Shown piece by piece: positions 39,160 to 51,912 of a stretch of DNA of 64,000 nt (the first letter of the stretch is position 1; every line of letters starts with the position of its first letter). The stretch is from the sequence record MT612989.1; one strand, 5' to 3'. Made by a program: the position numbers and the translations under genes. The notes beneath the pieces were generated by a model. It made no database searches. It was not told the origin of the DNA and saw only the letters and a program-made list of their open reading frames with translations.

Positions 39160-39282
39160 CGAGTGTTGGTGTAGTGGCAGCACACGTAGCATACTGTAAT
39201 CAGACATGATTATATTCAGCAACCAATTTACGCATATCATAGGGAGATCGTGGGAACGGTTCGATTCCGTTACACTCGACCA
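39160..39282 (+). ncRNA. tRNA-like RNA A with enlarged anticodon arm carrying the CWGCA motif
   Basis: Acceptor CGAGTGT/ACACTCG-A-CCA, D arm, T arm AACGG-TTCGATT-CCGTT; motif G39208, CAGCAA 39217. Confidence 0.8.
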
Positions 39283-39315
39283 ATGTACTCTCACTAACAA
39301 AGCGAGGTGGACAAT

Positions 39316-39471
39316 TTGATTGTATATCTTCTCGCACTAGTATTCATCGTCCTCTTTGCCTTGGACATTGAAGAAGAAAAGGTGCGCATTCATACTTTTG
39401 CGCTAATCACATGCGAACGGGTCATTCATCCCGTAATTAAAGCGCACGATTCCAGATTGTGTTTTGATTAG
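39316..39471 (+). CDS. Possible small membrane protein (51 aa, TTG start)
   Basis: GAGG RBS, N-terminal hydrophobic run LIVYLLALVFIVLFAL. Confidence 0.4.
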   Translation: MIVYLLALVFIVLFALDIEEEKVRIHTFALITCERVIHPVIKAHDSRLCFD

Positions 39472-39541
39472 CTAAGGCAAATATAACTAGAGGATTTTTG
39501 GTGCTTGTGGTTAATCACAAGCACTCTCAAGAACATATTGA

Positions 39542-39663
39542 GCAGGGTTGGTGTAGTGGCTAGCACACGTAGCATAAACGCAAGCTGTTAAGTTTGTATT
39601 CTGCAATCAATTTAGCATATCATTTCCAAGATCGTGACGCAGGTTCGAATCCTGCACCCTGCT
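39542..39663 (+). ncRNA. tRNA-like RNA B (paralogue of A)
   Basis: Acceptor GCAGGGT/ACCCTGC, T arm GCAGG-TTCGAAT-CCTGC, no encoded CCA; motif G39592, CTGCAA 39601. Confidence 0.8.
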
Positions 39664-39681
39664 CAATATGTTTTTACATTG

Positions 39682-39794
39682 GTGAAGTTAGTTCAGTTGG
39701 TTAGAATGCCGGCCAAAAAAACGAAGTCTGATAAGATTTCATTCTGCATTCACATGCACGCCGGAGGTCGCAGGTTCGAGTCCTGCACTTCACC
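39682..39794 (+). ncRNA. tRNA-like RNA C (tRNA-Asp-like body, anticodon replaced by motif insert)
   Basis: GTTCAGTTGGTTAGAATGCCGGCC...CACGCCGGAGGTCGCAGGTTCGAGTCC; motif G39735, CTGCAT 39744. Confidence 0.8.
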
Positions 39795-39804
39795 TTCAAA
39801 TTCT

Positions 39805-39929
39805 GGAGAGTTAGCTCAGTCTGGTAGAGCAAAAGAATGTTAAAGAATACTGACAAGCATTCATGCTGCAAACCTTAATAACTAGGTAAATCTTTTTGTC
39901 ACGTGGTTCAAATCCCGTACTCTCCACCA
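39805..39929 (+). ncRNA. tRNA-like RNA D with motif insert
   Basis: GGAGAGT/ACTCTCC-A-CCA, canonical D arm, AAAGA/TCTTT stem; motif G39857, CTGCAA 39866. Confidence 0.8.
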
Positions 39930-39943
39930 ATTTTCGAGGGTTT

Positions 39944-40312
39944 ATGAATAAGTTTAATGACATAAATGACGAACTTGATTGTATATTGCATCGTTGTGAG
40001 ATTGTAAAGCGCAATCTTCGAAAATATTGTACATTTGCTGTTGAAATGCAGTATAGACTTATGATAAACTTCATTGGCATGGGTTGCTATCAACAAGTTC
40101 TGCCGATATTAGACAATCTAAATTATCACCCTGATACAAGTCAGTTTGATAATATTGAGATTATGCAAACTATAAAAGAATTGATGAAATGTGCAGATAA
40201 GCTCGATTTGCTGCATCAACAAGACGCATTTCATCAAATTAAATCGACTGCTCGTATTACAGAAGAAGCAAACATCTTCGCTGCGAAAGTTGGTCGATTT
40301 CTAGAGAAATGA
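39944..40312 (+). CDS. Hypothetical protein (122 aa)
   Basis: GAGGG RBS and ATG 39944; the longer track ORF overlaps RNA D. Confidence 0.75.
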   Translation: MNKFNDINDELDCILHRCEIVKRNLRKYCTFAVEMQYRLMINFIGMGCYQQVLPILDNLNYHPDTSQFDNIEIMQTIKELMKCADKLDLLHQQDAFHQIKSTARITEEANIFAAKVGRFLEK

Positions 40313-40313
40313 T

Positions 40314-40391
40314 GGCCCTATAGCTCAACACGGTTAGAGCAACCGACTCATAATCGGTAGGTTACAGGTTCGAGTCCTGTTGGGGTCACCA
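40314..40391 (+). tRNA. tRNA CAT, Ile2-like (or Met)
   Basis: Cloverleaf, loop CTCATAA, GGCCC acceptor resembling ileX, CCA. Confidence 0.85.
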
Positions 40392-40411
40392 AAATAAATT
40401 GAAAAAAGTTG

Positions 40412-40440
40412 TTGACAGACGTTTCATCAACGTGTAGTAT
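40412..40440 (+). promoter_or_regulatory. Early promoter
   Basis: A tract, TTGACA-17-TAGTAT. Confidence 0.8.
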
Positions 40441-40470
40441 ACACATTATCAACTACACGAGGAAAACATT

Positions 40471-40701
40471 ATGTCACATAAATTGCTAGTTATCACATCA
40501 ATGCACGGTTGCTACGTCGATTACGATTTCAGAACTGAAATGTTTGACAGATACATGTGTGATGTTGTGATTCCGAACGACTCTGTTGTTTTGTACTCGG
40601 GTACAGTTTCAATAGATGAAATTCGAGCAGTTGCGAACGAATGTTACGCTGACATCAAGATTGAAGAAGTCAGTGATGATGTTTTTGACAGCTATCTTTA
40701 A
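40471..40701 (+). CDS. Hypothetical protein (76 aa)
   Basis: GAGG RBS, downstream of promoter. Confidence 0.75.
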   Translation: MSHKLLVITSMHGCYVDYDFRTEMFDRYMCDVVIPNDSVVLYSGTVSIDEIRAVANECYADIKIEEVSDDVFDSYL

Positions 40702-40705
40702 AAAT

Positions 40706-40945
40706 GCCGCTAACTGGCGTACAATACACAGTGTATTCCCAACATTAGTGCAGACGTAGGCTCGCAACCTACGTTGGTACCGAATCACTGGGACCGAGTA
40801 GAAAGTGCATGTGAGATGTCGAAGTCTTGTATGTAGAAATAACGCTCGGCTGCTCTGAAATGCTGATTAGCTCTTACTTCGAAACTCTAATTGGGTGGAA
40901 GAGGTGTTGTGTTTGACGTGTGTTCGATTCACACGAGCGGCGCCA
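40706..40945 (+). ncRNA. 240-nt RNA with tRNA-like ends (tmRNA-like topology)
   Basis: GCCGCT/AGCGGC acceptor, G-CCA end, T arm GTGTG-TTCGATT-CACAC, ACAATAC/GTGTTGT closing helix. Confidence 0.65.
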
Positions 40946-40958
40946 AGAGGAAATTATA

Positions 40959-41480
40959 ATGAAACCATTGAAGTTCGTTGAGGCGTTCTCTAAAGAAGAA
41001 CGTGCTGCTATGACGATTGAAGAACGTAGCAGACTTCGTAAAATATATAACGAACGCTATCAAGAGTATGTTGATAAGTACATCAATGTATTCACTCGAA
41101 AAGACTTTCGAAGAGAGCGTTGCTGGGTTATTCTTGCACGATGTAAAAAGACTGGTGAAATCATCGGTCGAATTGAAAATAGTTTTAGTATGGGATGGTC
41201 TAAAGAACGTGTTCGTGTTATTCGACCGTATCTAAACGGTAATTTCACGGGCGATGATCGCTTCTCTAAAGCTGAGTACAACAAAGCGTGTGCTGAGTAC
41301 ATAACTCATCATGAGAAACAAGTAAAGTCTCTCAGAGAAGCTTACAAAGACACTCACGACGTTTTCTTATCTCGTGTGGGTAGTAAGAACTGTCCTGTTT
41401 CTATTGATTGGGATACGTATTACAGTAAAAAAGACAAACGAAACTTTGAATATCGAAATTTGAAATTCAAAGTTAAATAA
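40959..41480 (+). CDS. Hypothetical basic protein (173 aa)
   Basis: GAGG RBS, ATG 40959. Confidence 0.75.
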   Translation: MKPLKFVEAFSKEERAAMTIEERSRLRKIYNERYQEYVDKYINVFTRKDFRRERCWVILARCKKTGEIIGRIENSFSMGWSKERVRVIRPYLNGNFTGDDRFSKAEYNKACAEYITHHEKQVKSLREAYKDTHDVFLSRVGSKNCPVSIDWDTYYSKKDKRNFEYRNLKFKVK

Positions 41481-41485
41481 TTCAT

Positions 41486-41601
41486 AGTCGGGTAGCTCAG
41501 TGGTAGAGCACGAAGAATGATACTGACAAGTATCGCTCCAGCACTCCTTCAATTGCCTGTTAAGCACGTGGTCGCTGGTTCGAATCCAGCCCCGACTACC
41601 A
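41486..41601 (+). ncRNA. tRNA-like RNA E: GTT anticodon arm interrupted by 41-nt motif insert
   Basis: AGTCGGG/CCCGACT-A-CCA; CG[insert]TGC-CTGTTAA-GCACG; motif G41530, CAGCAC 41539. Confidence 0.8.
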
Positions 41602-41627
41602 TTTTTGATAAACTAGTGAGGTATAAC

Positions 41628-41864
41628 ATGAGCGGAACATTTAATATCAACAAAACGTTACTGACTCCGAAACAATTGCGCAATCTAACAGATGAGCGTC
41701 TGAATGAATATCGCAAGTCGTTTCGTAAGCCTCTTGGGTTTTTGAAGCATCTGAACGATACAAACGAATTGACTTCAGATCAGCACAAGAAATTCGTTGA
41801 GCTTAATAAGCACTACAACGACGAAATTCTTGCTGAAATGAACAAGCGAAAACACTTAGGTTAA
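41628..41864 (+). CDS. Hypothetical protein (78 aa)
   Basis: GAGG RBS, ATG 41628; the track start lies inside RNA E. Confidence 0.7.
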   Translation: MSGTFNINKTLLTPKQLRNLTDERLNEYRKSFRKPLGFLKHLNDTNELTSDQHKKFVELNKHYNDEILAEMNKRKHLG

Positions 41865-41991
41865 TAAAATCGCAGAAAATTGATAATTTTTTTCAATTTT
41901 CTGCGAAAATACCGCAAATCGTCAGATTTAGTGTTATAAGTACTATAAAGAAACAAAACAAATTTTAATTTTTATTTCAAGAGAGCATTCA

Positions 41992-42105
41992 ATGACGCAT
42001 TCGTTTACACATTCATCTGAGACATTACGCAGCGATTTTCTGCGCTCAGAATTCGTGTATCTAGCGAATCCGATTGCGAACCAGAAGTGGGATACCCTCT
42101 TGTAG
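41992..42105 (+). CDS. Possible 37-aa peptide MTHSFTHSSETLRS...
   Basis: AGAGAG RBS-like, followed by terminator. Confidence 0.35.
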   Translation: MTHSFTHSSETLRSDFLRSEFVYLANPIANQKWDTLL

Positions 42106-42134
42106 TCCGATAGTATAACATAGAAGTATACTTG

Positions 42135-42158
42135 AGGACGCAAATAGCGTCCTTTTTT
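42135..42158 (+). terminator. Rho-independent terminator
   Basis: AGGACGC/GCGTCCT then T tract. Confidence 0.8.
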
Positions 42159-42235
42159 ATGGGCGTAAGAAAGTTAAGAAATTTTGTTTAACGTACTTTG
42201 ATTACAGAGTATGATAAACAAAGTTAAAGAACAAA

Positions 42236-42309
42236 CGGGACGTGGCGTAAAGGTAGCGTTCATGCTTTGGGAGCATGTGGTAAGAGTTCGAGTCTCTTCG
42301 TCCCGACCA
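42236..42309 (+). tRNA. tRNA-Pro(TGG)
   Basis: CATGC-TTTGGGA-GCATG, CCA. Confidence 0.92.
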
Positions 42310-42318
42310 ATTTAAAAT

Positions 42319-42395
42319 CCGTGACTAGCTCAATCTGGTAGAGTACTCCGTTTGGGGCGGAGAAGTTAAGCGTTCGAATCGCTTGTCACGGACCA
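42319..42395 (+). tRNA. tRNA-Pro(TGG), second copy
   Basis: CTCCG-TTTGGGG-CGGAG, CCA. Confidence 0.9.
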
Positions 42396-42403
42396 GTTTT
42401 AAT

Positions 42404-42479
42404 GCCCGATTAGCTCAATTGGAAGAGCAGCGCCCTACGAAGGCGAAGGTTACAAGTTCGAATCTTGTATTGGGTGCCA
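42404..42479 (+). tRNA. tRNA-Arg(ACG)
   Basis: Loop CTACGAA, CCA. Confidence 0.92.
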
Positions 42480-42682
42480 GTTAGTGTTGTTTGATTGAAG
42501 CTCGCTTTCGCACATTCCCGAAACTGCTTCTACGAATTGATACGCTTAGGACCGTATCTCGTTAAGTACTGTCGAGATGATAGAATTTAACGAACTTTTT
42601 CATAAATTAGTGTTTATGATGTCTTGAGCGAGTGTTAATATTAACACATAGAAAATGAAAACGTTAAGTTCTTCAAAATAAA

Positions 42683-42814
42683 TTCAAAAAGATGTTTACA
42701 ACGATATAAACATCGTGTACAATGAAGAAAAGCGAAACATCATTCAAAATCGAATGAAAAGTTTTTCAAAAAGATGTTTACAACGATAAAAACATCATGT
42801 ACAATGAAGAAAAG
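42683..42814 (+). promoter_or_regulatory. Duplicated 50-bp early promoter unit
   Basis: 42683-42732 and 42765-42814 differ at 2 positions; TTTACA-17-TACAAT. Confidence 0.85.
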
Positions 42815-42832
42815 AAGTTTACAAAATTTAAT

Positions 42833-42909
42833 GCGCAAGTAGCCCAATTGGCAGAGGCACTGGTCTTAGAAACCAGAAGTTAAGAGTTCGAATCTCTTCT
42901 TGCGTACCA
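42833..42909 (+). tRNA. tRNA-Leu(TAG), short variable loop
   Basis: CTGGT-CTTAGAA-ACCAG, CCA. Confidence 0.9.
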
Positions 42910-42910
42910 A

Positions 42911-42985
42911 GCACCCTTAGCTTATCAGGAAAAGCGGCGGATTGAAGTCCCGCAGTGCTCGGTTCGATTCCGAGGGGGTGCACCA
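42911..42985 (+). tRNA. tRNA-Phe(GAA)
   Basis: Loop TTGAAGT, CCA. Confidence 0.85.
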
Positions 42986-43074
42986 TATTATAGCTTGTTT
43001 GTAAGAGTTAAATCAAGCAAGGGGTTTTAGTTTTGGGTTATTTAGCAAACGCTCTTAACGTGAAAATCAAATCT

Positions 43075-43149
43075 GGGTCGTTCGTATAACGGTAGTACAT
43101 CTGGCTTTTAACCAGAACGGTGAGAGTTCGAATCTCTTGCGACCCACCA
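43075..43149 (+). tRNA. tRNA-Lys(TTT)
   Basis: TCTGG-CTTTTAA-CCAGA, CCA. Confidence 0.92.
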
Positions 43150-43160
43150 GATTTTATAAT

Positions 43161-43237
43161 GCGTCGGTAGCTCATCATGGAAGAGCAGGGAGCTTTTAAC
43201 TCTCAGGTGTCTGGTTCGAGTCCAGGGCGGCGTACCA
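43161..43237 (+). tRNA. tRNA-Lys(TTT), second copy
   Basis: GGGAG-CTTTTAA-CTCTC, CCA. Confidence 0.92.
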
Positions 43238-43300
43238 AATTAGATACATTGTGTATCGCTTTGCAAGTTAGATAGCTTGCAAATCAATATACAATTTAAT

Positions 43301-43375
43301 TCTCCCGTGGACTAACGGTAGGTCATCACCCTTTCAAGGTGAAGTGCGCGAGTTCGAATCTCGTCGGGAGAACCA
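43301..43375 (+). tRNA. tRNA-Glu(TTC)
   Basis: TCACC-CTTTCAA-GGTGA, CCA. Confidence 0.92.
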
Positions 43376-43381
43376 AATTAC

Positions 43382-43467
43382 GGAGCGTACGTCTCAAGGT
43401 GAGACAGGGGACTGTAAATCCCTGACCCTTAACGGGTAGAGAGGTTCGATTCCTCTACGCTCCACCA
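43382..43467 (+). tRNA. tRNA-Tyr(GTA)
   Basis: Loop CTGTAAA, long variable arm, CCA. Confidence 0.92.
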
Positions 43468-43471
43468 GTTT

Positions 43472-43560
43472 TAGCTTGCATACTGCAATTTAACTTAATC
43501 TATTGATCGCTCGGCGAACTCAGTTCAGACAGCGATAAACAGACCAAAGAACGCAAGCTG
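43472..43560 (+). ncRNA. Inter-tRNA RNA K with open-form CWGCA motif
   Basis: GCTTGC-ATA-CTGCAA ... GCAAGC-TG. Confidence 0.65.
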
Positions 43561-43569
43561 TTGAATAAT

Positions 43570-43646
43570 TGCGGGGTAGAGAAGTGGTCATCTCGTCGGT
43601 CTCATAAGCCGGAGAACGCTGGTTCGAATCCAGCCCCACGCAACCA
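43570..43646 (+). tRNA. tRNA-fMet-like (CAT), atypical
   Basis: fMet-like body, loop CTCATAA; GGT/GCC instead of GGG/CCC; extra nt in acceptor 3' strand. Confidence 0.8.
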
Positions 43647-43692
43647 AATTTATTTCGACTAAATATTGTTTTACGCAATAAGGAAAATTACA

Positions 43693-43935
43693 ATGAAAAC
43701 ATTTGATGAATTCATTACCGAGTCGAAAGATGTTACTTTCGGAGTTTCTGGCTCACTTTTTAGTGGTGCAATGGATAGAGAGAGACATCGAAACATGATG
43801 CAAAAACTTGGCGCTGTTAGAGACACCAAATCAAAATCACAAGATAATGTTTGGGTTGTCAGTCAAGCGAATGCTGATGCAGTTGAAGAATATCTTAGTC
43901 AGTTTGATAAGCTGATGTGGGGTAGACACAAATAA
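43693..43935 (+). CDS. Probable internal head protein (80 aa)
   Basis: N-terminus MKTFDEFITE resembles T4 capsid-targeting sequence; ACTAAATA at 43658-43665. Confidence 0.65.
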   Translation: MKTFDEFITESKDVTFGVSGSLFSGAMDRERHRNMMQKLGAVRDTKSKSQDNVWVVSQANADAVEEYLSQFDKLMWGRHK

Positions 43936-43941
43936 TTAATT

Positions 43942-44040
43942 GGAAGGCTTAGCCGAGAGATTCTGGGTAGCGGCAACGGTCTTGAAAACCGTCGGTCACC
44001 GGGAGGTGATGTTAGGGTTCGAATCCCTAGTCTTCCGCCA
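43942..44040 (+). tRNA. tRNA-Ser(TGA), enlarged D loop
   Basis: ACGGT-CTTGAAA-ACCGT, long variable arm, G-CCA. Confidence 0.9.
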
Positions 44041-44104
44041 ATTAGTTAACCGGGAAGTTTAGTCACTTAACCGATTAACACGAGCACTGAAATGTGCTCA
44101 CTTT

Positions 44105-44178
44105 AGTCCCTTAGCTCAACGGTAGAGCGTGCGACCGATAATCGCTTGGTAAGAGTTCGATTCTCTTAGGGACTACCA
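44105..44178 (+). tRNA. tRNA-Ile(GAT)
   Basis: Loop CCGATAA (C33), CCA. Confidence 0.88.
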
Positions 44179-44184
44179 GATTTT

Positions 44185-44258
44185 AGGGGCATGATGTAAA
44201 GGCAGCATGACGGATTCCAAACCCGTTCGTTAGAGTTCGAATCTCTATGCCCCTGCCA
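44185..44258 (+). tRNA. tRNA-Trp(CCA)
   Basis: Loop TTCCAAA, G-CCA. Confidence 0.9.
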
Positions 44259-44262
44259 GTTT

Positions 44263-44322
44263 AAGTAATCTTACAGCAAACAATACAAAACTTTTATTTG
44301 GAAAAAGCAAAAAGGATTACTG
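44263..44322 (+). ncRNA. Inter-tRNA RNA F with open-form motif
   Basis: AA-GTAATC-TTA-CAGCAA ... GATTAC-TG. Confidence 0.7.
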
Positions 44323-44333
44323 TTTAAATTCAA

Positions 44334-44408
44334 GGGTGTGTAACTCAGAGGCAGAGTAGTCGGCTGTTAACCGACAAGTCGAGATTTCGAAATTCTCCAC
44401 GCCCGCCA
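44334..44408 (+). tRNA. tRNA-Asn(GTT)
   Basis: GTCGG-CTGTTAA-CCGAC, G-CCA. Confidence 0.9.
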
Positions 44409-44409
44409 T

Positions 44410-44485
44410 GCTTCATTAACTCAGTTGGTAGAGTGTCTGACTGTTAATCAGAGAGTCGTTGGTTCGAGTCCAACATGAAGCGCCA
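44410..44485 (+). tRNA. tRNA-Asn(GTT), second copy
   Basis: TCTGA-CTGTTAA-TCAGA, G-CCA. Confidence 0.92.
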
Positions 44486-44553
44486 AATTCGGAGAGTCAC
44501 TACCGTTAAGTGTGAACTTGAAAAACAAAGCAACTACTTTAAGTTGTCTTTGG

Positions 44554-44729: not shown

Positions 44730-44845
44730 AAGAGTGTTTTCAGCAAACAATTTACTAATATTCTTATCGGAAAGAAATGTTTAGGGTTCGATTCCCTTTC
44801 AGTGTTGGTATCACTGGTCTGGACGACGCTAGTAATAACACTCAG
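44730..44845 (+). ncRNA. RNA G: motif stem at termini enclosing a T arm and closed acceptor-like hairpin (Y-RNA/YrlA-like)
   Basis: AA-GAGTGT-TTT-CAGCAA ... AGGG-TTCGATT-CCCT, TCAGTG/CACTGG ... ACACTC-AG. Confidence 0.65.
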
Positions 44846-45450: not shown

Positions 45451-45568
45451 AGAGAGACAATATACAGCAAACAATTGAAATTACTTAAAAGAAGTGATGA
45501 TCTTAACCTGGGCTGATTTTAACCTGAGCTTGCTTAGGCGCAGCTTGAAAGGAAAGATTCTCTCTGTC
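45451..45568 (+). ncRNA. RNA I with open-form motif (less regular stem)
   Basis: AGAGAGACAATATA-CAGCAA ... ATTCTCTCTGTC. Confidence 0.5.
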
Positions 45569-45574
45569 TAGAAA

Positions 45575-45747
45575 TAGTCAGATAGGCGCGTCGCTGAAAC
45601 AGACGATATTTGCTTGTTGAGAATCAATAAGCTAGTCAACTCCGATTTATGCAAAAGACGAAAAAACACTTCGGTATTGTCTGTACTTAATTCGTCGGAA
45701 ACGACACTGTAGCCGAAAGGCAAGTTTACTAACTTAGTTGTTAGTCG
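45575..45747 (+). ncRNA. Multi-hairpin region with GNRA loops
   Basis: GCTTGTTGA/TCAATAAGC, GTCG-GAAA-CGAC, GCC-GAAA-GGC, ACTAAC/GTTAGT. Confidence 0.45.
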
Positions 45748-46356: not shown

Positions 46357-46596
46357 ATGACGCCTGCATTACTTGAAACTCATGAATACGTAAACCACAA
46401 CCAAATCGAAAAGCTACAGCAAATGGACAGACTTATGTTTGATTGTTGGCGTGCTGGGTATAAACGTGGCAAGATTTTAGAGCTTGCATTGTCGATTGAG
46501 TCTTCAACAACCGAAGCAGACATCGAAATTTATTTCAAAAATATGTTTACAAGAGAACTATCGGCTGATAGTATCTACTTAAAGAAAACTGTATGA
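46357..46596 (+). CDS. Hypothetical protein (79 aa)
   Basis: ORF between tRNA-Val and tRNA-His, GAGA RBS. Confidence 0.7.
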   Translation: MTPALLETHEYVNHNQIEKLQQMDRLMFDCWRAGYKRGKILELALSIESSTTEADIEIYFKNMFTRELSADSIYLKKTV

Positions 46597-46747
46597 CGGA
46601 GTAGTGCTCCGACCGAATGACACACGCAAATGAGTCCGGTTGACAAACGTTATATGTCCCAAAGTATTGCAGGTAGCGACGGCGGTGTTGCTAGTAGATT
46701 TATCTATTTCTCCAAGACATAATGCAAGCTTTTAAAGTGTACTTTGG

Positions 46748-46825
46748 TGTGGCAGTGGGTGAAGTGGAAATACCCCCGGGTTGTGATTCCGGAAGATGCG
46801 GGTTCGATCCCCGTCTGTCACCCCA
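46748..46825 (+). tRNA. tRNA-His(GTG), U at -1
   Basis: CCGGG-TTGTGAT-TCCGG, C73-CCA. Confidence 0.9.
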
Positions 46826-46837
46826 AAGTACATTTAT

Positions 46838-46911
46838 GCTCGAATCGTATAATGGCAGTATGACGGATTGCAAATCCGCAGGTCAGGGTTCGATTCCCTG
46901 TTCGAGCTCCA
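46838..46911 (+). tRNA. tRNA-Cys(GCA)
   Basis: Loop TTGCAAA, U73-CCA. Confidence 0.9.
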
Positions 46912-46913
46912 AT

Positions 46914-46990
46914 GCGCACGTGGTCCAATTGGCAGAGGCATGAGGCTTAAAATCTCAGGGATGGCGGTTCGAATCCGCCCGTGCGTACCA
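46914..46990 (+). tRNA. tRNA-Leu(TAA), short variable loop
   Basis: TGAGG-CTTAAAA-TCTCA, CCA. Confidence 0.9.
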
Positions 46991-47003
46991 AATTCTAGCA
47001 TAA

Positions 47004-47095
47004 GCCGCGTTCTATACGAAGCTAGACTACCGCCGTTGAAAAACGGTCTCAGCCGAGCGAAAGCTGACAGGTGTTAGGGATTAAAGAGTCGCGGC
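47004..47095 (+). ncRNA. Structured inter-tRNA RNA
   Basis: GCCGCG/CGCGGC closing stem, CCGTT-GAAA-AACGG, TCAGC/GCTGA. Confidence 0.5.
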
Positions 47096-47106
47096 AGTTT
47101 ATTCAA

Positions 47107-47183
47107 GCCCAACTAGTCCAATTGGCAGAGGCACTAGTTTCAAACACTAGGAGTTCCGAGTTCGAATCTCGGGTTGGGCACCA
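47107..47183 (+). tRNA. tRNA-Leu(CAA), short variable loop
   Basis: CTAGT-TTCAAAC-ACTAG, CCA. Confidence 0.9.
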
Positions 47184-47279
47184 AATTCACTTAGCAACGC
47201 GAATCGAAAGAGAGTGGATAGACCTGCTAAGAGTCCCGCTAGGTCTTTAAATTATCTAAAGTGGATCTGCGAAGCGCGT

Positions 47280-47314
47280 GGCACACGTCAGCAATAAGAG
47301 CAAATATGTGTCTG
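47280..47314 (+). ncRNA. Minimal open-form motif J
   Basis: GGCACA-CGT-CAGCAA ... TGTGTC-TG. Confidence 0.55.
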
Positions 47315-47351
47315 AGCATGAGAGCAGCATGCCATTAATTGATGAGACGTT

Positions 47352-47440
47352 GGAAGCATGGTCTAAAGGTATGACAGCACCCTGCTAAGGTGTCGGACGT
47401 TAATAGCGTTCTCTGGGTTCGATTCCCAGTGCTTCCGCCA
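47352..47440 (+). tRNA. tRNA-Ser(GCT)
   Basis: GCACC-CTGCTAA-GGTGT, long variable arm, G-CCA. Confidence 0.92.
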
Positions 47441-47445
47441 AATTC

Positions 47446-47705
47446 GCAATAAGACATTGTACAGCAATCATTACAAAATCAAAGCAAACTTTAATAGTAA
47501 TGAGGCGCACTAGCTGCTTTCTCAGTGATGACGTGAGCCTGTCGCATTCTCATGGTAGGAAATGACCATTAAGACGGTGTTCGTACTGTCAAACGAAATA
47601 GGACTCATGCCGAATCATGAGTATTTTTCCGATGAGAAACATCGTTATAGTCAATTGAGATTTAAGGAAAGACGATAAAACATTTCTCGAATGTCTGTGT
47701 ATTGC
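47446..47705 (+). ncRNA. About 260-nt RNA H closed by the motif stem
   Basis: GCAAT-AA-GACATT-GTA-CAGCAA ... AATGTC-TG-TGT-ATTGC, several internal hairpins, then terminator. Confidence 0.65.
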
Positions 47706-47712
47706 ACATTAG

Positions 47713-47736
47713 AACCTGCCTTGAGCAGGTTTTTTT
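47713..47736 (+). terminator. Terminator ending the tRNA cluster
   Basis: AACCTGC/GCAGGTT then T tract. Confidence 0.85.
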
Positions 47737-48572: not shown

Positions 48573-48598
48573 AAAAAAGCCCCAATTAAGGGGCTTTT
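48573..48598. terminator. Bidirectional terminator
   Basis: A6-GCCCC..GGGGC-T4 between convergent genes. Confidence 0.8.
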
Positions 48599-48974: not shown

Positions 48975-49039
48975 GTGTTGACTTCCTGTTGTTAAACCTG
49001 TATCATGTATTTATCGGAAATAACTAACGAGAATTTACT

Positions 49040-49387
49040 ATGTTTGTAATGATTGATGATATGCGTGATATCGATAAGTTCACTGCGCCTGAAATTTCCG
49101 CAGATCAGAAGCTTGTTTTGCGTACGTATGAAGACGGTATGAAATTCGTCAAACATACGAATCTTACAGATATTACTTTATTCATGGACAATGATCTAGG
49201 CGGTGCTCTTGGTCATGAGGGATATGATATTCTCTCTCATGCAATTGATCATCGTAACTTCCCACGCACAGTTGTTCTAGTAACGAGTAACCCTGTTGCT
49301 CACTCTAAGATGACTATGATGTTGATGAGTACACTTCAATATAAACGTGTGGGTTCTATCTTTATGAGGCAAGATACATGCACTTAA
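49040..49387 (+). CDS. Cyclic-phosphate-processing receiver-like domain protein
   Basis: IDDMR, MDNDLG..EGYDIL, VTSNPVAHSKM pattern of that family (recognised from memory). Confidence 0.7.
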   Translation: MFVMIDDMRDIDKFTAPEISADQKLVLRTYEDGMKFVKHTNLTDITLFMDNDLGGALGHEGYDILSHAIDHRNFPRTVVLVTSNPVAHSKMTMMLMSTLQYKRVGSIFMRQDTCT

Positions 49388-49743
49388 ACGTAATTTCTGC
49401 TGCTGCAAATGCAATTAGAGTCACTTTACCAAATGGCGAAGAGAGGGATATTGTTGTTGCAGATAGCTGCCATTTTGGTCGAAACATGCAAGGCGTGTTT
49501 AAGCTATTGAAAGAACTTGGCTGTACATATGAACATCGAAGCGAACTTGGTGATCGTGGGCAGGGATTCATCAATTATTGTGGTGAATACTTCAATCGCG
49601 CTGATGCTTATGAACTCGCGAAAGAAAGCGGTCAACCATTCAATGATGGGTACACGCTACCAGATATTGACGGTGATGGTCGTCCTCGTCTCGATAGTTC
49701 ATGCATTCGACATTTTTCAAAACCAATTAAGGAATATCTATGA
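49378..49743 (+). CDS. Conserved phage hypothetical protein
   Basis: ISAAA, HFG, QGFI..GEYFNRADAYELA pattern. Confidence 0.75.
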   Translation: MHLNVISAAANAIRVTLPNGEERDIVVADSCHFGRNMQGVFKLLKELGCTYEHRSELGDRGQGFINYCGEYFNRADAYELAKESGQPFNDGYTLPDIDGDGRPRLDSSCIRHFSKPIKEYL

Positions 49744-50075
49744 GCAATCTATATGATATTTTAACTCAACGAGTCAAGCAGAATCGTTCAAAACGCGAAG
49801 AGTTGTTCGTCGTTGAAATGCGTAAATCAATTGAGCGTAAGATCGGTGGTGTTTCGGGATTTCAGTTCCCGATTACGATTCAAGTTAATCTTGAACGAAA
49901 TGAATGTTGTGATGAAATGATGACTCTCATCAAGAGTGTCATGCGACGTGAGGGATTTCACAATTTCGATGCACAGTTCGGTCATTATTCTGGCGACCCT
50001 CGTGATGTGAGAGACTATTCATATTCTTTTGTGAAATTGACAATTCGAGAAAATAAACAAGCGGGGTTTCAATGA
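49740..50075 (+). CDS. Hypothetical protein (111 aa)
   Basis: Overlapping ATGA junctions in operon. Confidence 0.7.
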   Translation: MSNLYDILTQRVKQNRSKREELFVVEMRKSIERKIGGVSGFQFPITIQVNLERNECCDEMMTLIKSVMRREGFHNFDAQFGHYSGDPRDVRDYSYSFVKLTIRENKQAGFQ

Positions 50076-50386
50076 TGCTTAGTCATGACGAACTTTCAAA
50101 ACAAATTAATCAACGAGAGCAAATAGCTCGTAAAGTTCTTAGCGAACATTATAATGGTGAATGTGAAAAAGAATTCACACATGCAGTTGAAAACGGGGCT
50201 TTTTTCCCGATTAAAATCAAAGTACCAATTCACATTAGTGATTGTGATAAGAAAGGTTCTGGTTTCATTCGTGCATTCTTCGAACAGCATGGCTACCGAA
50301 ATTTACGCACTTGCTATGAATCTGGTGGTTATGTATCTGTTGAAATATTCAAAAATGGTACGAATATCAGTCGTCATTATCGATAA
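50072..50386 (+). CDS. Hypothetical protein (104 aa)
   Basis: Overlapping ATGA junction. Confidence 0.7.
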   Translation: MMLSHDELSKQINQREQIARKVLSEHYNGECEKEFTHAVENGAFFPIKIKVPIHISDCDKKGSGFIRAFFEQHGYRNLRTCYESGGYVSVEIFKNGTNISRHYR

Positions 50387-50399
50387 ATTAAAAAAAGTG

Positions 50400-50427
50400 T
50401 TTACATGCATTAAAATTCGCGTATAAT
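50400..50427 (+). promoter_or_regulatory. Early promoter of Ro60-like gene
   Basis: A tract, GTGTTTACA..TATAAT. Confidence 0.8.
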
Positions 50428-50437
50428 CACTTCATCA

Positions 50438-50482
50438 AAGACATTTTACAGCAATTAATTATGAGGAAATGAACAATGTCAG
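50438..50482 (+). promoter_or_regulatory. Leader hairpin with CWGCA motif enclosing RBS and AUG of Ro60-like gene
   Basis: AA-GACATT-TTA-CAGCAA..GAGG..AATGTC-AG; ATG 50476 lies in the 3' strand. Confidence 0.75.
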
Positions 50483-51912
50483 TATTTATGAACGCAATGC
50501 AAACAAACGATTCACGCACAGCAAACGGTGCAGTTACTCACAGCACTTCAGGTAACGAGTGTCTAAACTTGTTCTTCGGTATTGCTGCTATGCGTGGCAA
50601 CGATCAGTCTAAAACACTGTTCGGTCGTGCGTTTGCAGAAAACCCAGAACTAGCGACTCGCATTCTTTTGTGGTCTCGTGATGTTCGAGGTGGTGCGGGT
50701 GAACGTGGTACTTTCCGTACTCTATTCACTAAACTTTGTAATGAACAGCCTGACGTAGCTCGTGCTGTAATGTCGAAAATTCCAGAACTAGGTCGTTACG
50801 ATGACTTGATTTCTGCTTTCGGTACACGTCTTGAACAAGATGCGATCACAATGTGGTCGAACGCAATTGTCAATGACAAGAATGGTCTTGCTGCGAAGTG
50901 GTTCCCACGTGAAAACAGCAAAAACGGTCATGTGTTCAAGCGCACAATCAAGTCTCTTGGCGTAACTGCGAAGCAGTGGCGTAAGATTCTGTCGCTTCTG
51001 TCTGACACTGTTGAGCAGAAGATGTGTGCGCAAAAATGGGATGCAATCGACTTCGGTAAGTTGCCTTCTGTAGCGTCTGCTCGTTATCAACAAGCATTCG
51101 GTCGTAACGCTTCAACACGTTACACAAACTACATCGAGTCACTTCAAAAAGGTGAAGCGAAGATCAACGCTGGCGCATTGTTCCCATACGATGTCGTTAA
51201 GAGCGTTAGTCACGGTAATGCGTCTGTAGCGAACGAGCAATGGAAAGCTCTGCCAAACTACATGGAAGGTTCTGATGAACGCATCATCCCTGTTGTTGAC
51301 GTGTCTGGCTCTATGAGCACGCCAATTAACGCAGGTACAGACCGTTCAGGTGTGACTTGTAAGCAAGTTGCAATGTCTCTTGGGATTTATGTTGCTGAAC
51401 GCAATGAAGGCATCTTCAAAGATCAGTTCATTTCGTTCTCAAGCGACCCGCACTTCCACCAGTTGCGCGGCTCTTCATTGAAAGAGCGTCTTGATAACAT
51501 GAATCGTTCAGGCGAAGACATGAGTACGAACATCGGTAAGTGCTTTGATGTTCTGCTAGAGCGTGCGAAGCGTGCAAATCTTTCACAAGAAGATATGCCA
51601 ACCAAGTTGCTTATCATGAGTGACATGGAATTCGATCAAGCAAACACTGGTGGTGGTTGGTACGGTCGCGGTGAACCTGCGAACTTCGATGCAATCAAAG
51701 CCAAGTACGCACGTGCTGGTTATGAAATGCCACAACTGGTCTTCTGGAACATTCGTGGTCGTCTTGGCAACGTTCCGGTTAAAGCTGGTGAAGCGGGTAC
51801 TGCACTGGTATCTGGTTGTAGCCCATCTATCTTGACTTCACTGTTGGGTGGTGAGCTTGAGCCAATCAAGATCATGATGAAAACTGTAGGCGTCGAACGC
51901 TACAGCTTTTAA
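50476..51912 (+). CDS. Ro60-like TROVE plus vWA protein (DUF2828-type)
   Basis: TANGA, RDVRGGAGER, PELGRYDDL, LAAKWFPRE; MIDAS VVDVSGSM; SDMEFD; VFWNI. Confidence 0.85.
   Translation: MSVFMNAMQTNDSRTANGAVTHSTSGNECLNLFFGIAAMRGNDQSKTLFGRAFAENPELATRILLWSRDVRGGAGERGTFRTLFTKLCNEQPDVARAVMSKIPELGRYDDLISAFGTRLEQDAITMWSNAIVNDKNGLAAKWFPRENSKNGHVFKRTIKSLGVTAKQWRKILSLLSDTVEQKMCAQKWDAIDFGKLPSVASARYQQAFGRNASTRYTNYIESLQKGEAKINAGALFPYDVVKSVSHGNASVANEQWKALPNYMEGSDERIIPVVDVSGSMSTPINAGTDRSGVTCKQVAMSLGIYVAERNEGIFKDQFISFSSDPHFHQLRGSSLKERLDNMNRSGEDMSTNIGKCFDVLLERAKRANLSQEDMPTKLLIMSDMEFDQANTGGGWYGRGEPANFDAIKAKYARAGYEMPQLVFWNIRGRLGNVPVKAGEAGTALVSGCSPSILTSLLGGELEPIKIMMKTVGVERYSF

What the first reader, a model, noticed from the sequence alone, without database searches (positions are those of the whole stretch)
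39160..51912. Candidate phage Ro60 plus multi-Y-RNA system: one RNA motif repeated 12 times, including in the Ro60 gene's own leader
Seen: a motif with a 5-6 bp stem closed by C-G, flanked by WG and (usually) AA, and CWGCA starting exactly 9 nt after the stem G. Closed hexaloop form at G39208, 39592, 39735, 39857 and 41530 (loops AGACAT, TGTTAA, TGATAA, TGACAA, TGACAA), all inside tRNA-like RNAs. Open, circularly permuted form at G43474, 44265, 44732, 45456, 47280, 47453 and 50440. Stem sequences vary while pairing and spacing hold (45456 is irregular). The last copy is the leader of the TROVE-vWA gene. Known: Ro60/Rsr proteins bind Y RNAs, and bacterial Y RNAs mimic tRNA. Inference: the motif is the binding site of this Ro60-like protein, and the RNAs are a Y-RNA-like family that tethers or titrates it. 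It differs from the classic Y-RNA motif as I recall it.
Basis: partly seen in the sequence, partly recalled or inferred. Interest (0 to 1): 0.95.

Follow-up and report, generated by a model that had tools for sequence, protein, structure and literature searches.

The report
Phage Ro-like protein with partner RNAs
A Vibrio phage carries twelve copies of one small RNA module beside a gene for a Ro60-shaped protein; the same gene-plus-RNA pairing recurs in very different phages and in a giant-virus contig, and the module matches the hallmark of the unexplained "Class I" RNAs of Dictyostelium.

Summary
All 12 sites exist at the stated coordinates on the + strand of a KVP40-like Vibrio phage (100% identical to vB_ValM_R11Z).

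The refined module is a 6-7 bp helix (5' A-G…, …C-U-G 3'), a 3-nt spacer (N-U-W), then CAGCAA. It occurs closed (replacing the anticodon loop of five tRNA-like RNAs) or open (helix made by the RNA's two ends).

- **In the window:** a strict scan gives 8 hits on the + strand, 0 on the − strand, 0.36 expected.
- **Elsewhere:** in 80 unrelated viral contigs chosen only for a DUF2828 homolog, 105 modules lie on the gene's strand, 3 on the other, 5.6 expected. Most lie within 500 nt of the gene.
- **Range:** FelixO1-like, Cronobacter, Listeria, Campylobacter and mycobacterial phages, and a giant-virus contig.
- **Control:** T4 bases 1-80,000, with no DUF2828 homolog, have no convincing module.

The protein's model matches Ro60 crystal structures over its full length. 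Minimal copies overlap the gene's own ribosome-binding region.

No Rfam family reaches threshold. Short forms repeatedly hit the Dictyostelium Class I RNA model below threshold with the same consensus. Long forms carry a YrlA-type tRNA-like core.

Binding is inferred, not shown.

The parts
39146..39292 (+). tRNA-like RNA 1. A 20-bp terminal stem (39146-39165 with 39273-39292) extends the acceptor. The closed module is hairpin 39196-39213 (GUAAUC-AGACAU-GAUUAU), then AUU, then CAGCAA at 39217-39222.
   Evidence: Sequence read; MFE fold; ARAGORN with introns 39160-39282; closed-form model R1 43.2 bits. The loop closes with A-U where other copies have U-A.
39534..39670 (+). tRNA-like RNA 2. A 15-bp terminal stem (39534-39548 with 39656-39670). 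The closed module is 39580-39597 (GCAAGC-UGUUAA-GUUUGU), then AUU, then CUGCAA at 39601.
   Evidence: R1 50.2 bits. Annotated as a 122-nt 'tRNA-Cys' in phi-ST2.
39681..39798 (+). tRNA-like RNA 3. Intact acceptor, D, anticodon-stem and T arms. A 46-nt insert replaces the anticodon loop and holds closed module 39723-39740 plus CUGCAU at 39744.
   Evidence: Rfam tRNA 53.7 bits; R1 43.2 bits. Its counterpart is annotated as a pseudo-tRNA in KVP40.
39805..39929 (+). tRNA-like RNA 4, with an encoded CCA end. Closed module 39845-39862 has one A.C mismatch; CUGCAA at 39866.
   Evidence: Rfam tRNA 50.1 bits; R1 43.7 bits. The mismatch is repaired in phage D480 (GAAUAU/GUAUUC).
41486..41601 (+). tRNA-like RNA 5, with an encoded CCA end. 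Closed module 41518-41535 (UGAUAC-UGACAA-GUAUCG); CAGCAC at 41539.
   Evidence: Rfam tRNA 49.8 bits; R1 42.6 bits. Annotated 'tRNA-Ile', 113 nt, in phi-ST2.
43473..43562 (+). Open-form small RNA of about 90 nt, between tRNA-Tyr and tRNA-Met. 5' A-GCUUGC-AUA-CUGCAA; 3' GCAAGC-UGUU.
   Evidence: conserved in all relatives.
44264..44323 (+). Open-form short RNA of about 59 nt, between tRNA-Trp and tRNA-Asn. A-GUAAUC-UUA-CAGCAA … GAUUAC-UGU. This is the copy most like a Class I RNA.
   Evidence: RF01414 31.8 bits against a gathering score of 41.5. Compensatory change in KVP40: GCAAUC/GAUUGC.
44731..44845 (+). Open-form RNA of about 115 nt. GAGUGU-UUU-CAGCAA … ACACUC-AG. Inside are a T-arm-like hairpin (AGGGUUCGAUUCCCU) and a closed hairpin, in the YrlA order.
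45455..45684 (+). Open-form long RNA of about 230 nt. GACAAU-AUA-CAGCAA … AUUGUC-UGU.
   Evidence: The partner is conserved at 194-221 nt in KVP40, D480, QD01, VS2 and nt-1. The MFE fold closes the terminal helix.
47279..47315 (+). Minimal open-form hairpin of about 36 nt. GGCACA-CGU-CAGCAA-UAAGAGCAAAUA-UGUGUC-UG.
   Evidence: Compensatory change in nt-1: GGCAUA/UAUGUC.
47452..47733 (+). Last RNA of the tRNA operon. GACAUU-GUA-CAGCAA … AAUGUC-UGU (47690-47698), followed by an intrinsic terminator at 47711-47733.
   Evidence: the partner is conserved at 175-255 nt in relatives.
50400..50482 (+). Promoter (TTTACA, 16 nt, TATAAT; 50400-50427) and mRNA leader of the Ro-like gene. The leader module is AAA-GACAUU(50440)-UUA-CAGCAA … with the Shine-Dalgarno GAGG at 50463-50466 inside, and the partner AAUGUC at 50475-50480 contains the start codon.
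50476..51912 (+). Gene for the Ro60-fold protein (478 aa): DUF2828 + DUF7788, with a vWA domain carrying the MIDAS motif D275-x-S277-x-S279. Terminator at 51922-51944.
   Evidence: Pfam; PHROG 850 'RNA-binding protein'; invariant columns; AF2 model and Foldseek.
42695..42805 (+). Two tandem promoter-like sites (TTTACA, 17 nt, TACAAT) ahead of the tRNA and small-RNA operon (42833-47733).

Best explanation
The 12 sites are copies of one RNA recognition module. The module is a 7-bp helix whose outer end is A-U then G-C, flanked by an A and a G. Three nucleotides follow its 5' strand (N-U-W), then single-stranded CAGCAA.

I infer that the module is the binding site of the Ro60-fold DUF2828/DUF7788 protein encoded at 50476-51912. 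On this reading the RNAs carrying it are that protein's Y-RNA-like partners.

Three settings:
1. Five tRNA-shaped RNAs carry the module in place of the anticodon loop.
2. Six RNAs, released from the tRNA operon by ordinary tRNA processing, carry it as the helix formed by their own ends. One of them has a permuted tRNA-like core, as in YrlA.
3. One minimal copy sits at the 5' end of the protein's own mRNA and encloses the Shine-Dalgarno sequence and the AUG. Excess free protein would therefore shut off its own translation, and the abundant small RNAs would titrate it.

In both topologies the module sits at the anticodon end of a tRNA mimic. The RNP could thus bring the ring protein to a factor that recognises tRNAs.

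Shown: the module, its covariation, its genomic linkage to the gene, and the Ro60 fold of the model. Inferred: binding, autoregulation, tethering.
For: The module is real:
- Window strict scan: 8 forward, 0 reverse, 0.36 expected.
- Closed helix: 97.8% of cells paired, 6 of 7 pairs with compensatory changes, 0 of 500 shuffles as high.
- Of 50 sites picked by the 5' sequence alone, 46 have a perfect 6-nt partner followed by UG within 250 nt, against 0.65 expected.
- Compensatory changes within the KVP40 group.
- Positions not imposed by the scan are conserved: A at -1 in 82%, U at stem position 4 in 75%, spacer U in 86%, A after CAGCA in 86%.

Linkage to the gene:
- 80 IMG/VR loci: 105 hits on the gene strand, 3 on the other, 5.6 in shuffles.
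- With the 3' flank relaxed to NG: 179 against 14; 70 of 80 loci have a module; 60 of 80 have one within 500 nt of the gene.
- Reverse test: DUF2828 is in the fetched stretch for 16 of 41 full modules, against 1 of 78 non-module pattern matches (Fisher p = 5e-8).
- The same pairing is seen in fjerdesal, Cronobacter S13, Listeria P100, Campylobacter F375 and mycobacteriophage Nicholas, and a giant-virus MAG contig.
- DUF2828 is the only protein family shared within 5 kb either side across 10 diverse loci.
- T4 bases 1-80,000 have no homolog and no convincing module.

Leader copies:
- Conserved in seven KVP40-type relatives; D480 lacks it.
- Found independently in L039, L048, L054 and L057, and in F375.
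- The promoter lies just upstream of the leader copy.

Protein: Foldseek's top five PDB matches are all Ro60/TROVE.

YrlA-type core in long forms.
Against: - There are no binding or expression data.
- The protein has no Pfam TROVE match even at E <= 10.
- The module is unlike the GNCGAA/GGUCCGA Ro-binding motif.
- No module was found in a Staphylococcus phage locus that has the gene, nor in about 10 of the 80 IMG/VR loci, several of them short contigs.
- Most lineages have no leader copy.
- For the look-alike Dictyostelium Class I RNAs, the only demonstrated direct binder is an RRM protein, Rnp1A/CIBP.
- Many modules in the KVP40 group lie 3-11 kb from the gene.
Confidence: 0.7

Rival explanations
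1. The module is bound by a different factor, for example a host or phage RRM-type or other RNA-binding protein, or an RNA-repair or processing enzyme. The DUF2828 protein would act in the same pathway without recognising the module itself, for instance by handling the RNAs as cargo or substrates.
For: - The only proven direct binder of the look-alike Dictyostelium Class I RNA is the RRM protein Rnp1A/CIBP.
- In Listeria P100 the gene sits among RNA-repair genes annotated as RtcB-like ligase, RNA ligase and phosphoesterase.
- Ro60 itself also handles misfolded RNAs as substrates (PDB 2i91 is among the structural matches).
Against: - DUF2828 is the only gene family shared near the modules across 10 very different loci.
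- Hosts range from Proteobacteria to Firmicutes, Actinobacteria and, for the giant-virus contig, probably eukaryotes. A common host binder would therefore have to be universal.
- Leader copies overlapping the ribosome-binding site of the DUF2828 gene itself are the classic signature of autoregulation by the encoded protein.
Confidence: 0.13
2. The module is a processing or stability element of phage tRNA operons. It would be a terminal clamp that protects spacer RNAs from exonucleases, or a guide for RNase E, P or III cleavage, with no dedicated protein partner.
For: - In the window six open copies lie between tRNAs in one operon.
- In fjerdesal and S13, too, many copies lie between tRNAs.
- Terminal helices do protect processed RNAs (general knowledge).
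Against: - In most IMG/VR loci the modules follow the DUF2828 stop codon. Of three such loci searched with Rfam, L026 returned no tRNA anywhere, while L037 and L041 do carry tRNA arrays.
- Mycobacteriophage Nicholas has three modules next to the gene and only one annotated tRNA, about 2.7 kb upstream.
- T4's tRNA operon, with its stable RNAs rnaC and rnaD, has none.
- A stability clamp would not need an invariant single-stranded CAGCAA at a fixed distance.
Confidence: 0.07
3. The five closed copies are intron-containing tRNA genes. The insert, with its conserved hairpin and CWGCA, would be a splicing signal, and mature tRNAs would result.
For: - tRNAscan-type annotation in phi-ST2 calls them tRNA-Cys, -Asn and -Ile of 113-122 nt.
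- The cloverleaf arms are intact.
Against: - The predicted anticodons and intron positions are mutually inconsistent: SeC, Trp, Val and Ile, with introns of 22-52 nt at different positions.
- KVP40's annotators called them pseudo-tRNAs.
- The same module occurs in RNAs with no tRNA part and in an mRNA leader.
- Two of the five have 15-20 bp extended acceptor stems, which mature tRNAs do not have.
Confidence: 0.04

Closest known systems
Ro60 with Y RNAs, especially bacterial and phage YrlA (Rfam RF02553; Chen et al. 2014, PMC4201824; Thermus phage phiLo Ro60 with Yrl1/2, PMC12135203)
   Same: - A ring-shaped HEAT-repeat plus vWA protein (Foldseek).
- Small RNAs encoded next to the gene on the same strand.
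- RNA ends paired into a stem carrying a conserved element.
- A tRNA-like domain in some members, with the same T-arm, closed-hairpin, D-arm order.
- Several RNAs per genome.
   Different: - The protein is Pfam DUF2828/DUF7788, not TROVE.
- The RNA element is G-R-W-U-N-N / N-U-W / CAGCAA, not GNCGAA/GGUCCGA.
- The YrlA model's terminal, Rsr-binding stems do not align.
- No hit reaches RF02553's gathering score.
- A non-permuted form exists, with the module in the anticodon loop of an otherwise normal tRNA shape.
- A copy sits in the gene's own leader.
Dictyostelium Class I RNAs (Rfam RF01414; Kjellin et al. 2021, PMC7919456)
   Same: Shared features:
- An RNA of about 60 nt.
- A short stem joining the 5' and 3' ends, conserved in structure but not in sequence.
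- An invariant 5' G pairing with the C of a conserved 3' CUG(U).
- A conserved single-stranded motif right after the 5' strand. The Rfam consensus is GaUcuC-CUUACAGCAA…GagAuC-UG.
- An A/U-rich variable interior.

Support. Eight sub-threshold RF01414 hits were found, and seven of them fall on module RNAs.
   Different: - Scores are 19.7-31.8 bits, below the gathering score of 41.5.
- The distance from the 5' G to CAGCAA is one nucleotide shorter in the phage RNAs.
- The phage RNAs sit in phage operons rather than as DUSE/Pol III genes.
- The phage family includes long (to about 250 nt), tRNA-like and closed permuted forms.
- Class I RNAs were reported as unique to Dictyostelia, and no TROVE-like partner is described for them.
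Phage T4 stable RNAs species 1 and 2 (rnaC, rnaD), and the 'pseudo-tRNAs' of KVP40
   Same: - Stable or putative small RNAs co-encoded in the syntenic tRNA cluster of T4-like phages.
- The KVP40 pseudo-tRNAs 3, 4 and 5 are the direct counterparts of the window's closed forms.
   Different: - T4 rnaC and rnaD lack the module, and T4 bases 1-80,000 lack the gene.
- The KVP40 entries were annotated only as pseudogenes, with no motif or partner proposed.
Bas63 gp130 (Felixounavirus; PhageMaP preprint, PMC11482910)
   Same: - By that preprint's description it is a Ro60-like protein encoded directly upstream of the tRNA stretch. Felixounavirus relatives such as fjerdesal have a DUF2828 gene in that position.
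- It is reported to counter the Ppl defence system.
- The authors speculated that some neighbouring 'tRNA genes' might be Y RNAs.
   Different: - No RNA was identified there.
- In the Felixounavirus fjerdesal the candidate partners are four RNAs lying between tRNAs, not the tRNAs themselves.

Membership tests
Ro60 / TROVE protein family | TROVE domain detectable by sequence (Pfam PF05731) | tested here: not met
   A Pfam scan at E <= 10 lists DUF7788, DUF2828 and weak noise, with no TROVE. phmmer against PDB sequences finds only designed armadillo-repeat proteins.
Ro60 / TROVE protein family | Ro60 fold: alpha-helical repeat ring followed by a vWA domain | tested here: met
   The AF2 model (pLDDT 79.5, pTM 0.75) has 9kop, 9l5y_A, 9l5y_B, 1yvr and 2i91 as its best PDB matches. 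E is 4.5e-8 to 1.4e-6 and TM 0.50-0.59 over 508-560 aligned columns.
Ro60 / TROVE protein family | MIDAS motif (DxSxS) in the vWA domain | tested here: met
   D275, S277 and S279 are invariant in 35 homologs.
Ro60 / TROVE protein family | Binds Y RNAs or misfolded RNAs | not testable with these tools
   Needs EMSA, RIP or a structure.
Y RNA / YrlA (RF02553) | Encoded close to the Ro gene on the same strand | tested here: met
   105 hits against 3, and 179 against 14, on the gene strand versus the other. 60 of 80 loci have a module within 500 nt of the gene. In the window the distances are 0-11 kb.
Y RNA / YrlA (RF02553) | Conserved Ro-binding stem motif (GNCGAAN0-1G / GGUCCGA bulged helix) | tested here: not met
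   The module consensus differs. The YrlA model's terminal stems do not align on L041 12413-12542. For the motif, see Chen 2014.
Y RNA / YrlA (RF02553) | Reaches the Rfam gathering score (69 bits) | tested here: not met
   The best scores are 38 and 34.8 bits in L041. The 32-bit hit in the window spans the junction of two tRNA-likes.
Y RNA / YrlA (RF02553) | tRNA-like domain | tested here: met
   - Three of the five closed forms score 49.8-53.7 bits on Rfam's tRNA model.
- The YrlA core aligns in L041.
- T arm plus closed hairpin are seen in window 44731-44845 and in L008 12390-12535.
- The short forms have no such domain.
Dictyostelium Class I RNA (RF01414) | Reaches the Rfam gathering score (41.5 bits) | tested here: not met
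   Scores are 31.8 (window 44265-44322), 30.8, 28.9, 28.2, 27.9, 26.7 and 19.7 bits.
Dictyostelium Class I RNA (RF01414) | Short stem joining the 5' and 3' ends; invariant 5' G paired with the C of a 3' CUG(U) | tested here: met
   See the 5' and 3' position profiles of 216 instances and the Rfam consensus alignment. Caveat: the G, the C and the UG were imposed by the scan. The unimposed support is the 46 of 50 result.
Dictyostelium Class I RNA (RF01414) | Conserved motif adjacent to the 5' stem strand (…CUUACAGCAA) | tested here: met
   UUACAGCAA or NUWCAGCAA is present. The distance from the 5' G is one nucleotide shorter than in the Rfam consensus.
Dictyostelium Class I RNA (RF01414) | DUSE promoter and expression as abundant cytoplasmic RNAs in dictyostelids | not tested
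   Not applicable to phage operons. Expression of the phage RNAs is untested.
tRNA (for the five closed forms) | Seven-nucleotide anticodon loop with a usable anticodon | tested here: not met
   Inserts sit in the anticodon position: 46 nt in RNA 3 by direct reading. ARAGORN's intron models, of 22-52 nt, give inconsistent anticodons.

The most novel reading that the evidence does not exclude
The phage RNAs and the Dictyostelium Class I RNAs would be one ancient RNA family. Its dedicated partner would be the DUF2828/DUF7788 Ro60-fold protein. This would be a second, previously unrecognised Ro/Y-type ribonucleoprotein system spanning tailed phages of at least three bacterial phyla, giant viruses and eukaryotes.

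If true, it would give the first molecular handle on three things: Class I RNAs, which were reported as unique to dictyostelids and linked to multicellular development; the DUF2828 family; and the 'pseudo-tRNAs' of KVP40-type phages.
Probability: 0.45. Interest if true: 0.95.

Novelty: new variant of a known kind. Interest (0 to 1): 0.88.

Why it matters
- **A candidate ligand for DUF2828.** DUF2828 proteins are encoded in at least 711 sequenced phage genomes and have thousands of metagenomic relatives. They had no known ligand. One member, Bas63 gp130, is reported to counter a bacterial defence system. A defined, mutable RNA module now makes the protein's biochemistry directly testable.
- **Ro/Y systems beyond the TROVE family.** The finding extends Ro/Y-type RNPs to a different protein family with a different RNA code. 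The same 3D idea, a ring protein at the anticodon end of a tRNA mimic, appears to have been built in two circular permutations.
- **Link to Dictyostelium Class I RNAs.** The match contradicts the published view that this abundant RNA class exists only in dictyostelids. It offers a concrete hypothesis for their unknown partner and origin.
- **Annotation.** Long "tRNA-OTHER", "pseudo-tRNA" and intron-containing tRNA calls in T4-like Vibrio, Aeromonas and Cronobacter phages are very probably these RNAs.

Tried and rejected
- **Structure without an alignment.** Single-sequence AF2 gave pLDDT 38 and was unusable. It was replaced by an alignment-based model.
- **Sequence search of the PDB.** It returned only designed armadillo repeats.
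- **tRNA-intron reading of the closed forms.** Rejected because ARAGORN's intron models are inconsistent.
- **The RNase H-like neighbour gene (51956-52486, PF04308) as a conserved partner.** It is present only in KVP40-like phages and distantly in S13, so it is not part of the system.
- **Staphylococcus phage S-CoN_Ph4.** The gene is present but no module was found under my criteria. The module may have diverged beyond recognition, or the exception may be real.
- **Collection scan with a general pattern.** A narrower 14-base pattern was used instead, which samples only one subfamily.
- **A Dictyostelium DUF2828 protein.** I could not demonstrate one. Homolog lists return only the 120 closest proteins, all unnamed metagenomic ones, and cluster look-ups gave no organism names.
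- **Source papers.** Avesson 2011 and Aspegren 2004 are not held in the library. The text of the 11-nt Class I motif is therefore taken from the Rfam consensus printed by cmscan.
- **Covariance model of the open form.** None was built. Its long variable interior suits a scripted scan with shuffle and opposite-strand controls better.
- **T4.** Bases 80,001-168,903 were not scanned.

Full report
**What the window is.** Window 39100-47600 is 100% identical to Vibrio phage vB_ValM_R11Z (MT612989.1, bases 163100-171600). This is a KVP40-like T4-type phage, and many relatives share 86-99% identity. ARAGORN finds 28 tRNAs at 40314-47440. Rfam's tRNA model also hits three unusually long tRNA-likes (113-122 nt) at 39682-39794, 39805-39926 and 41486-41598. 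In GenBank their counterparts are annotated as 'tRNA-OTHER/Cys/Asn/Ile' of 113-122 nt in phi-ST2 and as 'tRNA-Pseudo-3/4/5' in KVP40. The ORF at 50476-51912 is Pfam DUF2828 + DUF7788 and PHROG 850, 'RNA-binding protein'. Homologs occur in 711 phage records, including Felixounavirus, Listeria P100-like, Campylobacter, Staphylococcus and mycobacteriophages, where the annotation is 'Ro-like RNA binding protein'.

**Observation check.** Every one of the 12 sites is there. The five closed copies are hairpins of 6 bp with a six-base loop. The loop is better read as a U-A pair closing a GNNA tetraloop. Three nucleotides and CWGCA follow the hairpin.

The seven open copies have the same G-started strand, spacer and CWGCA. 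Their complementary strand lies 19-229 nt downstream and is followed by UG, or by AG at 44732 and 50440.

Its partner AUUGUC-UG lies 212 nt downstream and is conserved in all relatives at 194-221 nt. A strict scripted scan gives 8 hits on the + strand, 0 on the − strand and a mean of 0.36 in shuffles. The four exact matches to CWGCAAWCAAT in 64 kb all lie in 39601-45465 on the + strand.

**Refined anatomy.** I collected 216 distinct open instances from all loci. The scan itself imposed the G, the pairing, the CWGCA core and the UG. Several positions it did not impose are nevertheless conserved:
- A at -1 in 82%
- R at stem position 2
- W at stem position 3
- U at stem position 4 in 75%
- U at the middle of the spacer in 86%
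- A after CAGCA in 86%
- U after the 3' CUG as the commonest base

The -1 A pairs with the +1 U, making a 7-bp helix. In the closed form these two bases are the U-A pair that closes the tetraloop. The pair flips to U-A in mycobacteriophage Nicholas and in a large metagenomic subgroup. It flips to A-U in the loop at 39208.

**Is the helix real?** Three lines of evidence support it.
- *Closed form.* In a gapless alignment of 13 copies from six phages, 97.8% of cells pair, against 67.8% in shuffles. Six of seven pairs show compensatory changes, and the covariation score is 0.777 against 0.201, with 0 of 500 shuffles as high.
- *Open form, with no pairing criterion in the selection.* Fifty distinct sites in 80 loci were chosen only by the 5' sequence AGRWUNNNUWCAGCAA. 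Of these, 46 have a perfect 6-nt partner followed by UG within 250 nt. The shuffled expectation is 0.65. No such site lies on the opposite strand.
- *Within the KVP40 group.* GUAAUC/GAUUAC becomes GCAAUC/GAUUGC in KVP40. GGCACA/UGUGUC becomes GGCAUA/UAUGUC in nt-1. The A.C mismatch at 39857 is repaired in D480.

**Linkage to the DUF2828 gene.**
- *Felixounavirus fjerdesal (E. coli).* The gene lies immediately upstream of the tRNA array. Four RNAs between the tRNAs carry cAGAA-G(A/G)CC(A/G)W-WUW-CAGCAA … UGG. One of them has a T arm, a closed acceptor-like hairpin and a D arm.
- *Cronobacter phage S13.* Two long tRNA-likes with the closed module, and one open RNA, lie directly downstream of the gene. 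Four more open copies lie in its tRNA array.
- *Eighty IMG/VR contigs,* fetched only because they encode a homolog 46-54% identical (one locus, L010, is 98% identical):
  - Strict scan: 105 modules on the gene's strand, 3 on the other, 5.6 in shuffles.
  - With the 3' flank relaxed to NG: 179 against 14.
  - 70 of 80 loci have a module, and 60 of 80 have one within 500 nt of the gene.
  - Half of all modules lie within 500 nt downstream of the stop codon.
- *Reverse test.* Of 119 IMG/VR stretches matching an 18-nt 5' pattern, 41 are full modules. Sixteen of those have DUF2828 inside the few kilobases fetched, against 1 of 78 for the non-module matches (Fisher p = 5e-8).
- *More distant hosts.*
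  - Listeria P100 has three tandem modules just upstream of the gene.
  - Campylobacter F375 has one between tRNA-Tyr and the gene's ribosome-binding site.
  - Mycobacteriophage Nicholas has three just downstream of its 'Ro-like' gene.
  - A contig labelled as a giant-virus MAG has about six modules, by eye, within 700 nt downstream of a 27%-identical homolog. It also encodes a RING-finger protein.
- *Only shared neighbour.* Across ten diverse loci, DUF2828 is the only protein family shared within 5 kb either side.
- *Negative control.* T4 bases 1-80,000 include the syntenic tRNA cluster with rnaC and rnaD. They have no homolog. Their only two strict hits lack the conserved extra positions, are on the order of the chance expectation, and fall within annotated coding intervals.

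**The protein.** There is no Pfam TROVE match. However, the AF2 model built with 35 homologs (pLDDT 79.5) has Ro60/TROVE structures as its five best PDB matches. These are Thermus phage phiLo Ro60 (9kop, 9l5y) and Xenopus Ro60 (1yvr, 2i91). E is 4.5e-8 to 1.4e-6 and TM is 0.50-0.59 over the full length. The vWA MIDAS residues are invariant.

**Comparison with known RNA families.** No Rfam 15 family reaches its gathering score on any of these RNAs, apart from the tRNA model on three of the closed forms. Two sub-threshold signals recur and are informative.

1. *RF01414, Dictyostelium Class I RNA.* It hits the short open forms repeatedly: window 44265-44322 at 31.8 bits, and seven further hits at 19.7-30.8 bits in four other loci. 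Seven of the eight hits fall on module RNAs.
   - Its printed consensus is GaUcuC-CUUACAGCAA…AAAA…GagAuC-UG, with the stem joining the two ends. This is the same module, one nucleotide longer between the 5' G and CAGCAA.
   - Kjellin et al. describe Class I RNAs as follows:
     - They are 42-65 nt long.
     - A short stem joins the ends.
     - An 11-nt motif lies next to the 5' strand.
     - The 5' G is invariant, and the 3' end is a conserved CUGU.
     - Their function is unknown.
     - They are said to be unique to Dictyostelia.
2. *RF02553, YrlA.* It aligns to the tRNA-like core of long open forms (L041, 38 and 34.8 bits). Its terminal, Rsr-binding stems do not align.

I found no paper linking Class I RNAs to phages, Y RNAs or Ro60, and none describing an RNA partner for DUF2828. 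The PhageMaP preprint only speculates that tRNA genes next to Bas63 gp130 might be Y RNAs.

**Mechanism (inference).** The module is most simply read as the recognition site of the Ro-fold protein.

The leader copy is the strongest functional clue. The best promoter match in the region (11 of 12) ends at 50427, so the mRNA should start a few bases before AAA-GACAUU. The module's helix pairs 50440-50445 with 50475-50480. It therefore encloses the Shine-Dalgarno sequence (50463-50466) and the AUG (50476). This leader is conserved in seven KVP40-type relatives.

In at least four other lineages a 44-47-nt minimal module ends right at the Shine-Dalgarno sequence of the DUF2828 gene (L039, L048, L054, L057). 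In Campylobacter F375 a module ends about 15 nt before it. This is the usual design of translational autorepression, with the abundant small RNAs acting as competitors.

The tRNA operon starts from tandem promoters at 42695 and 42777 and ends at the terminator 47711-47733. It would release the open RNAs through ordinary tRNA end-processing. The terminal helix marks their ends.

In closed forms the module replaces the anticodon loop of a normal cloverleaf. In long open forms it closes a permuted cloverleaf whose acceptor is capped. In both cases the protein would sit at the anticodon end of an L-shaped mimic. It is therefore well placed to be carried to, or to decoy, a tRNA-recognising factor. 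Which factor, and to what end (RNA decay, repair or counter-defence), is open.

**Rivals.**
- A different binder with only pathway-level linkage to DUF2828 (0.13).
- A processing or stability clamp of tRNA operons (0.07).
- True tRNA introns (0.04).
- Chance is excluded by the counts above.

**Limits.**
- There is no expression or binding evidence.
- The scripted scan imposes pairing for most counts. The exception is.
- The reverse test samples one sub-pattern, and the fetched stretches are short.
- One Staphylococcus phage locus has the gene but no detectable module.
- T4 was scanned only to base 80,000.
- Whether dictyostelids encode a DUF2828 protein could not be checked with these tools.

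Noticed in passing
L209 (Listeria phage P100, NC_007610) 6762-7313, + strand: A full-length match to ROOL RNA (RF03087): 86 bits against a gathering score of 99.1, E 6.7e-16. It lies inside the tRNA array, about 1 kb upstream of the DUF2828 gene and its three modules. Rfam places P100's tRNAs on the same strand as the gene, although the GenBank table lists them on the opposite strand.
   Followed up: no
window 45167-45238: A tRNA-like sequence (Rfam tRNA 44.9 bits) that ARAGORN does not call. It corresponds to KVP40 'tRNA-Pseudo-1'. Its anticodon loop reads CUUGCAA and its acceptor is imperfect.
   Followed up: partly
window 39146-39292 and 39534-39670: Two of the tRNA-like RNAs have perfectly paired 20-bp and 15-bp extensions of the acceptor stem, so their 5' and 3' ends form a long Y-RNA-like terminal helix. 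Normal RNase P and CCA maturation seems unlikely for them.
   Followed up: partly
window 42650-42830: Two tandem repeats of about 82 nt, each carrying a TTTACA-17-TACAAT promoter-like site, just ahead of the tRNA/small-RNA operon. A single intrinsic terminator at 47711-47733 closes the operon.
   Followed up: partly
window 51956-52486: An RNase H-like (PF04308, PHROG 11311) gene lies directly after the Ro-like gene. It is conserved there in KVP40-type phages and is found about 4.3 kb downstream of the gene in Cronobacter S13. It is not generally linked to DUF2828.
   Followed up: yes
L003 (Vibrio phage D480) 13368-13995: A homing-endonuclease gene is inserted on the opposite strand just upstream of the DUF2828 gene. 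The KVP40-type promoter and leader module are missing there; CAGCA directly abuts the ATG.
   Followed up: no
L158 (IMG/VR GVMAG-S-1035414-12) 10937-11700: A long (AAAAC)n microsatellite is followed by about six modules, two of them closed with 11-12 nt loops, downstream of a 575-aa DUF2828 homolog. Neighbouring genes include RNase HII, a RING-finger protein and DUF2827.
   Followed up: partly
L041 (IMG/VR 3300042559_001610) 8605-9054 and 11760-12560: This phage contig encodes a tmRNA (75.4 bits) and several module RNAs. Two of them have a YrlA-type tRNA-like core. All are interleaved with tRNAs downstream of the DUF2828 gene.
   Followed up: partly
L213 (phage T4) 8909-9172, minus strand: T4's stable RNAs rnaC (species 1) and rnaD (species 2) sit at the syntenic end of the tRNA cluster. 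rnaC has a T-arm-like CCGGGUUCGAAUCCCGG. Neither has the module.
   Followed up: yes
window 48575-48598: A perfect bidirectional terminator-like hairpin (AAAAGCCCC…GGGGCUUUU) lies between convergent small ORFs, upstream of the Ro-like gene cluster.
   Followed up: no
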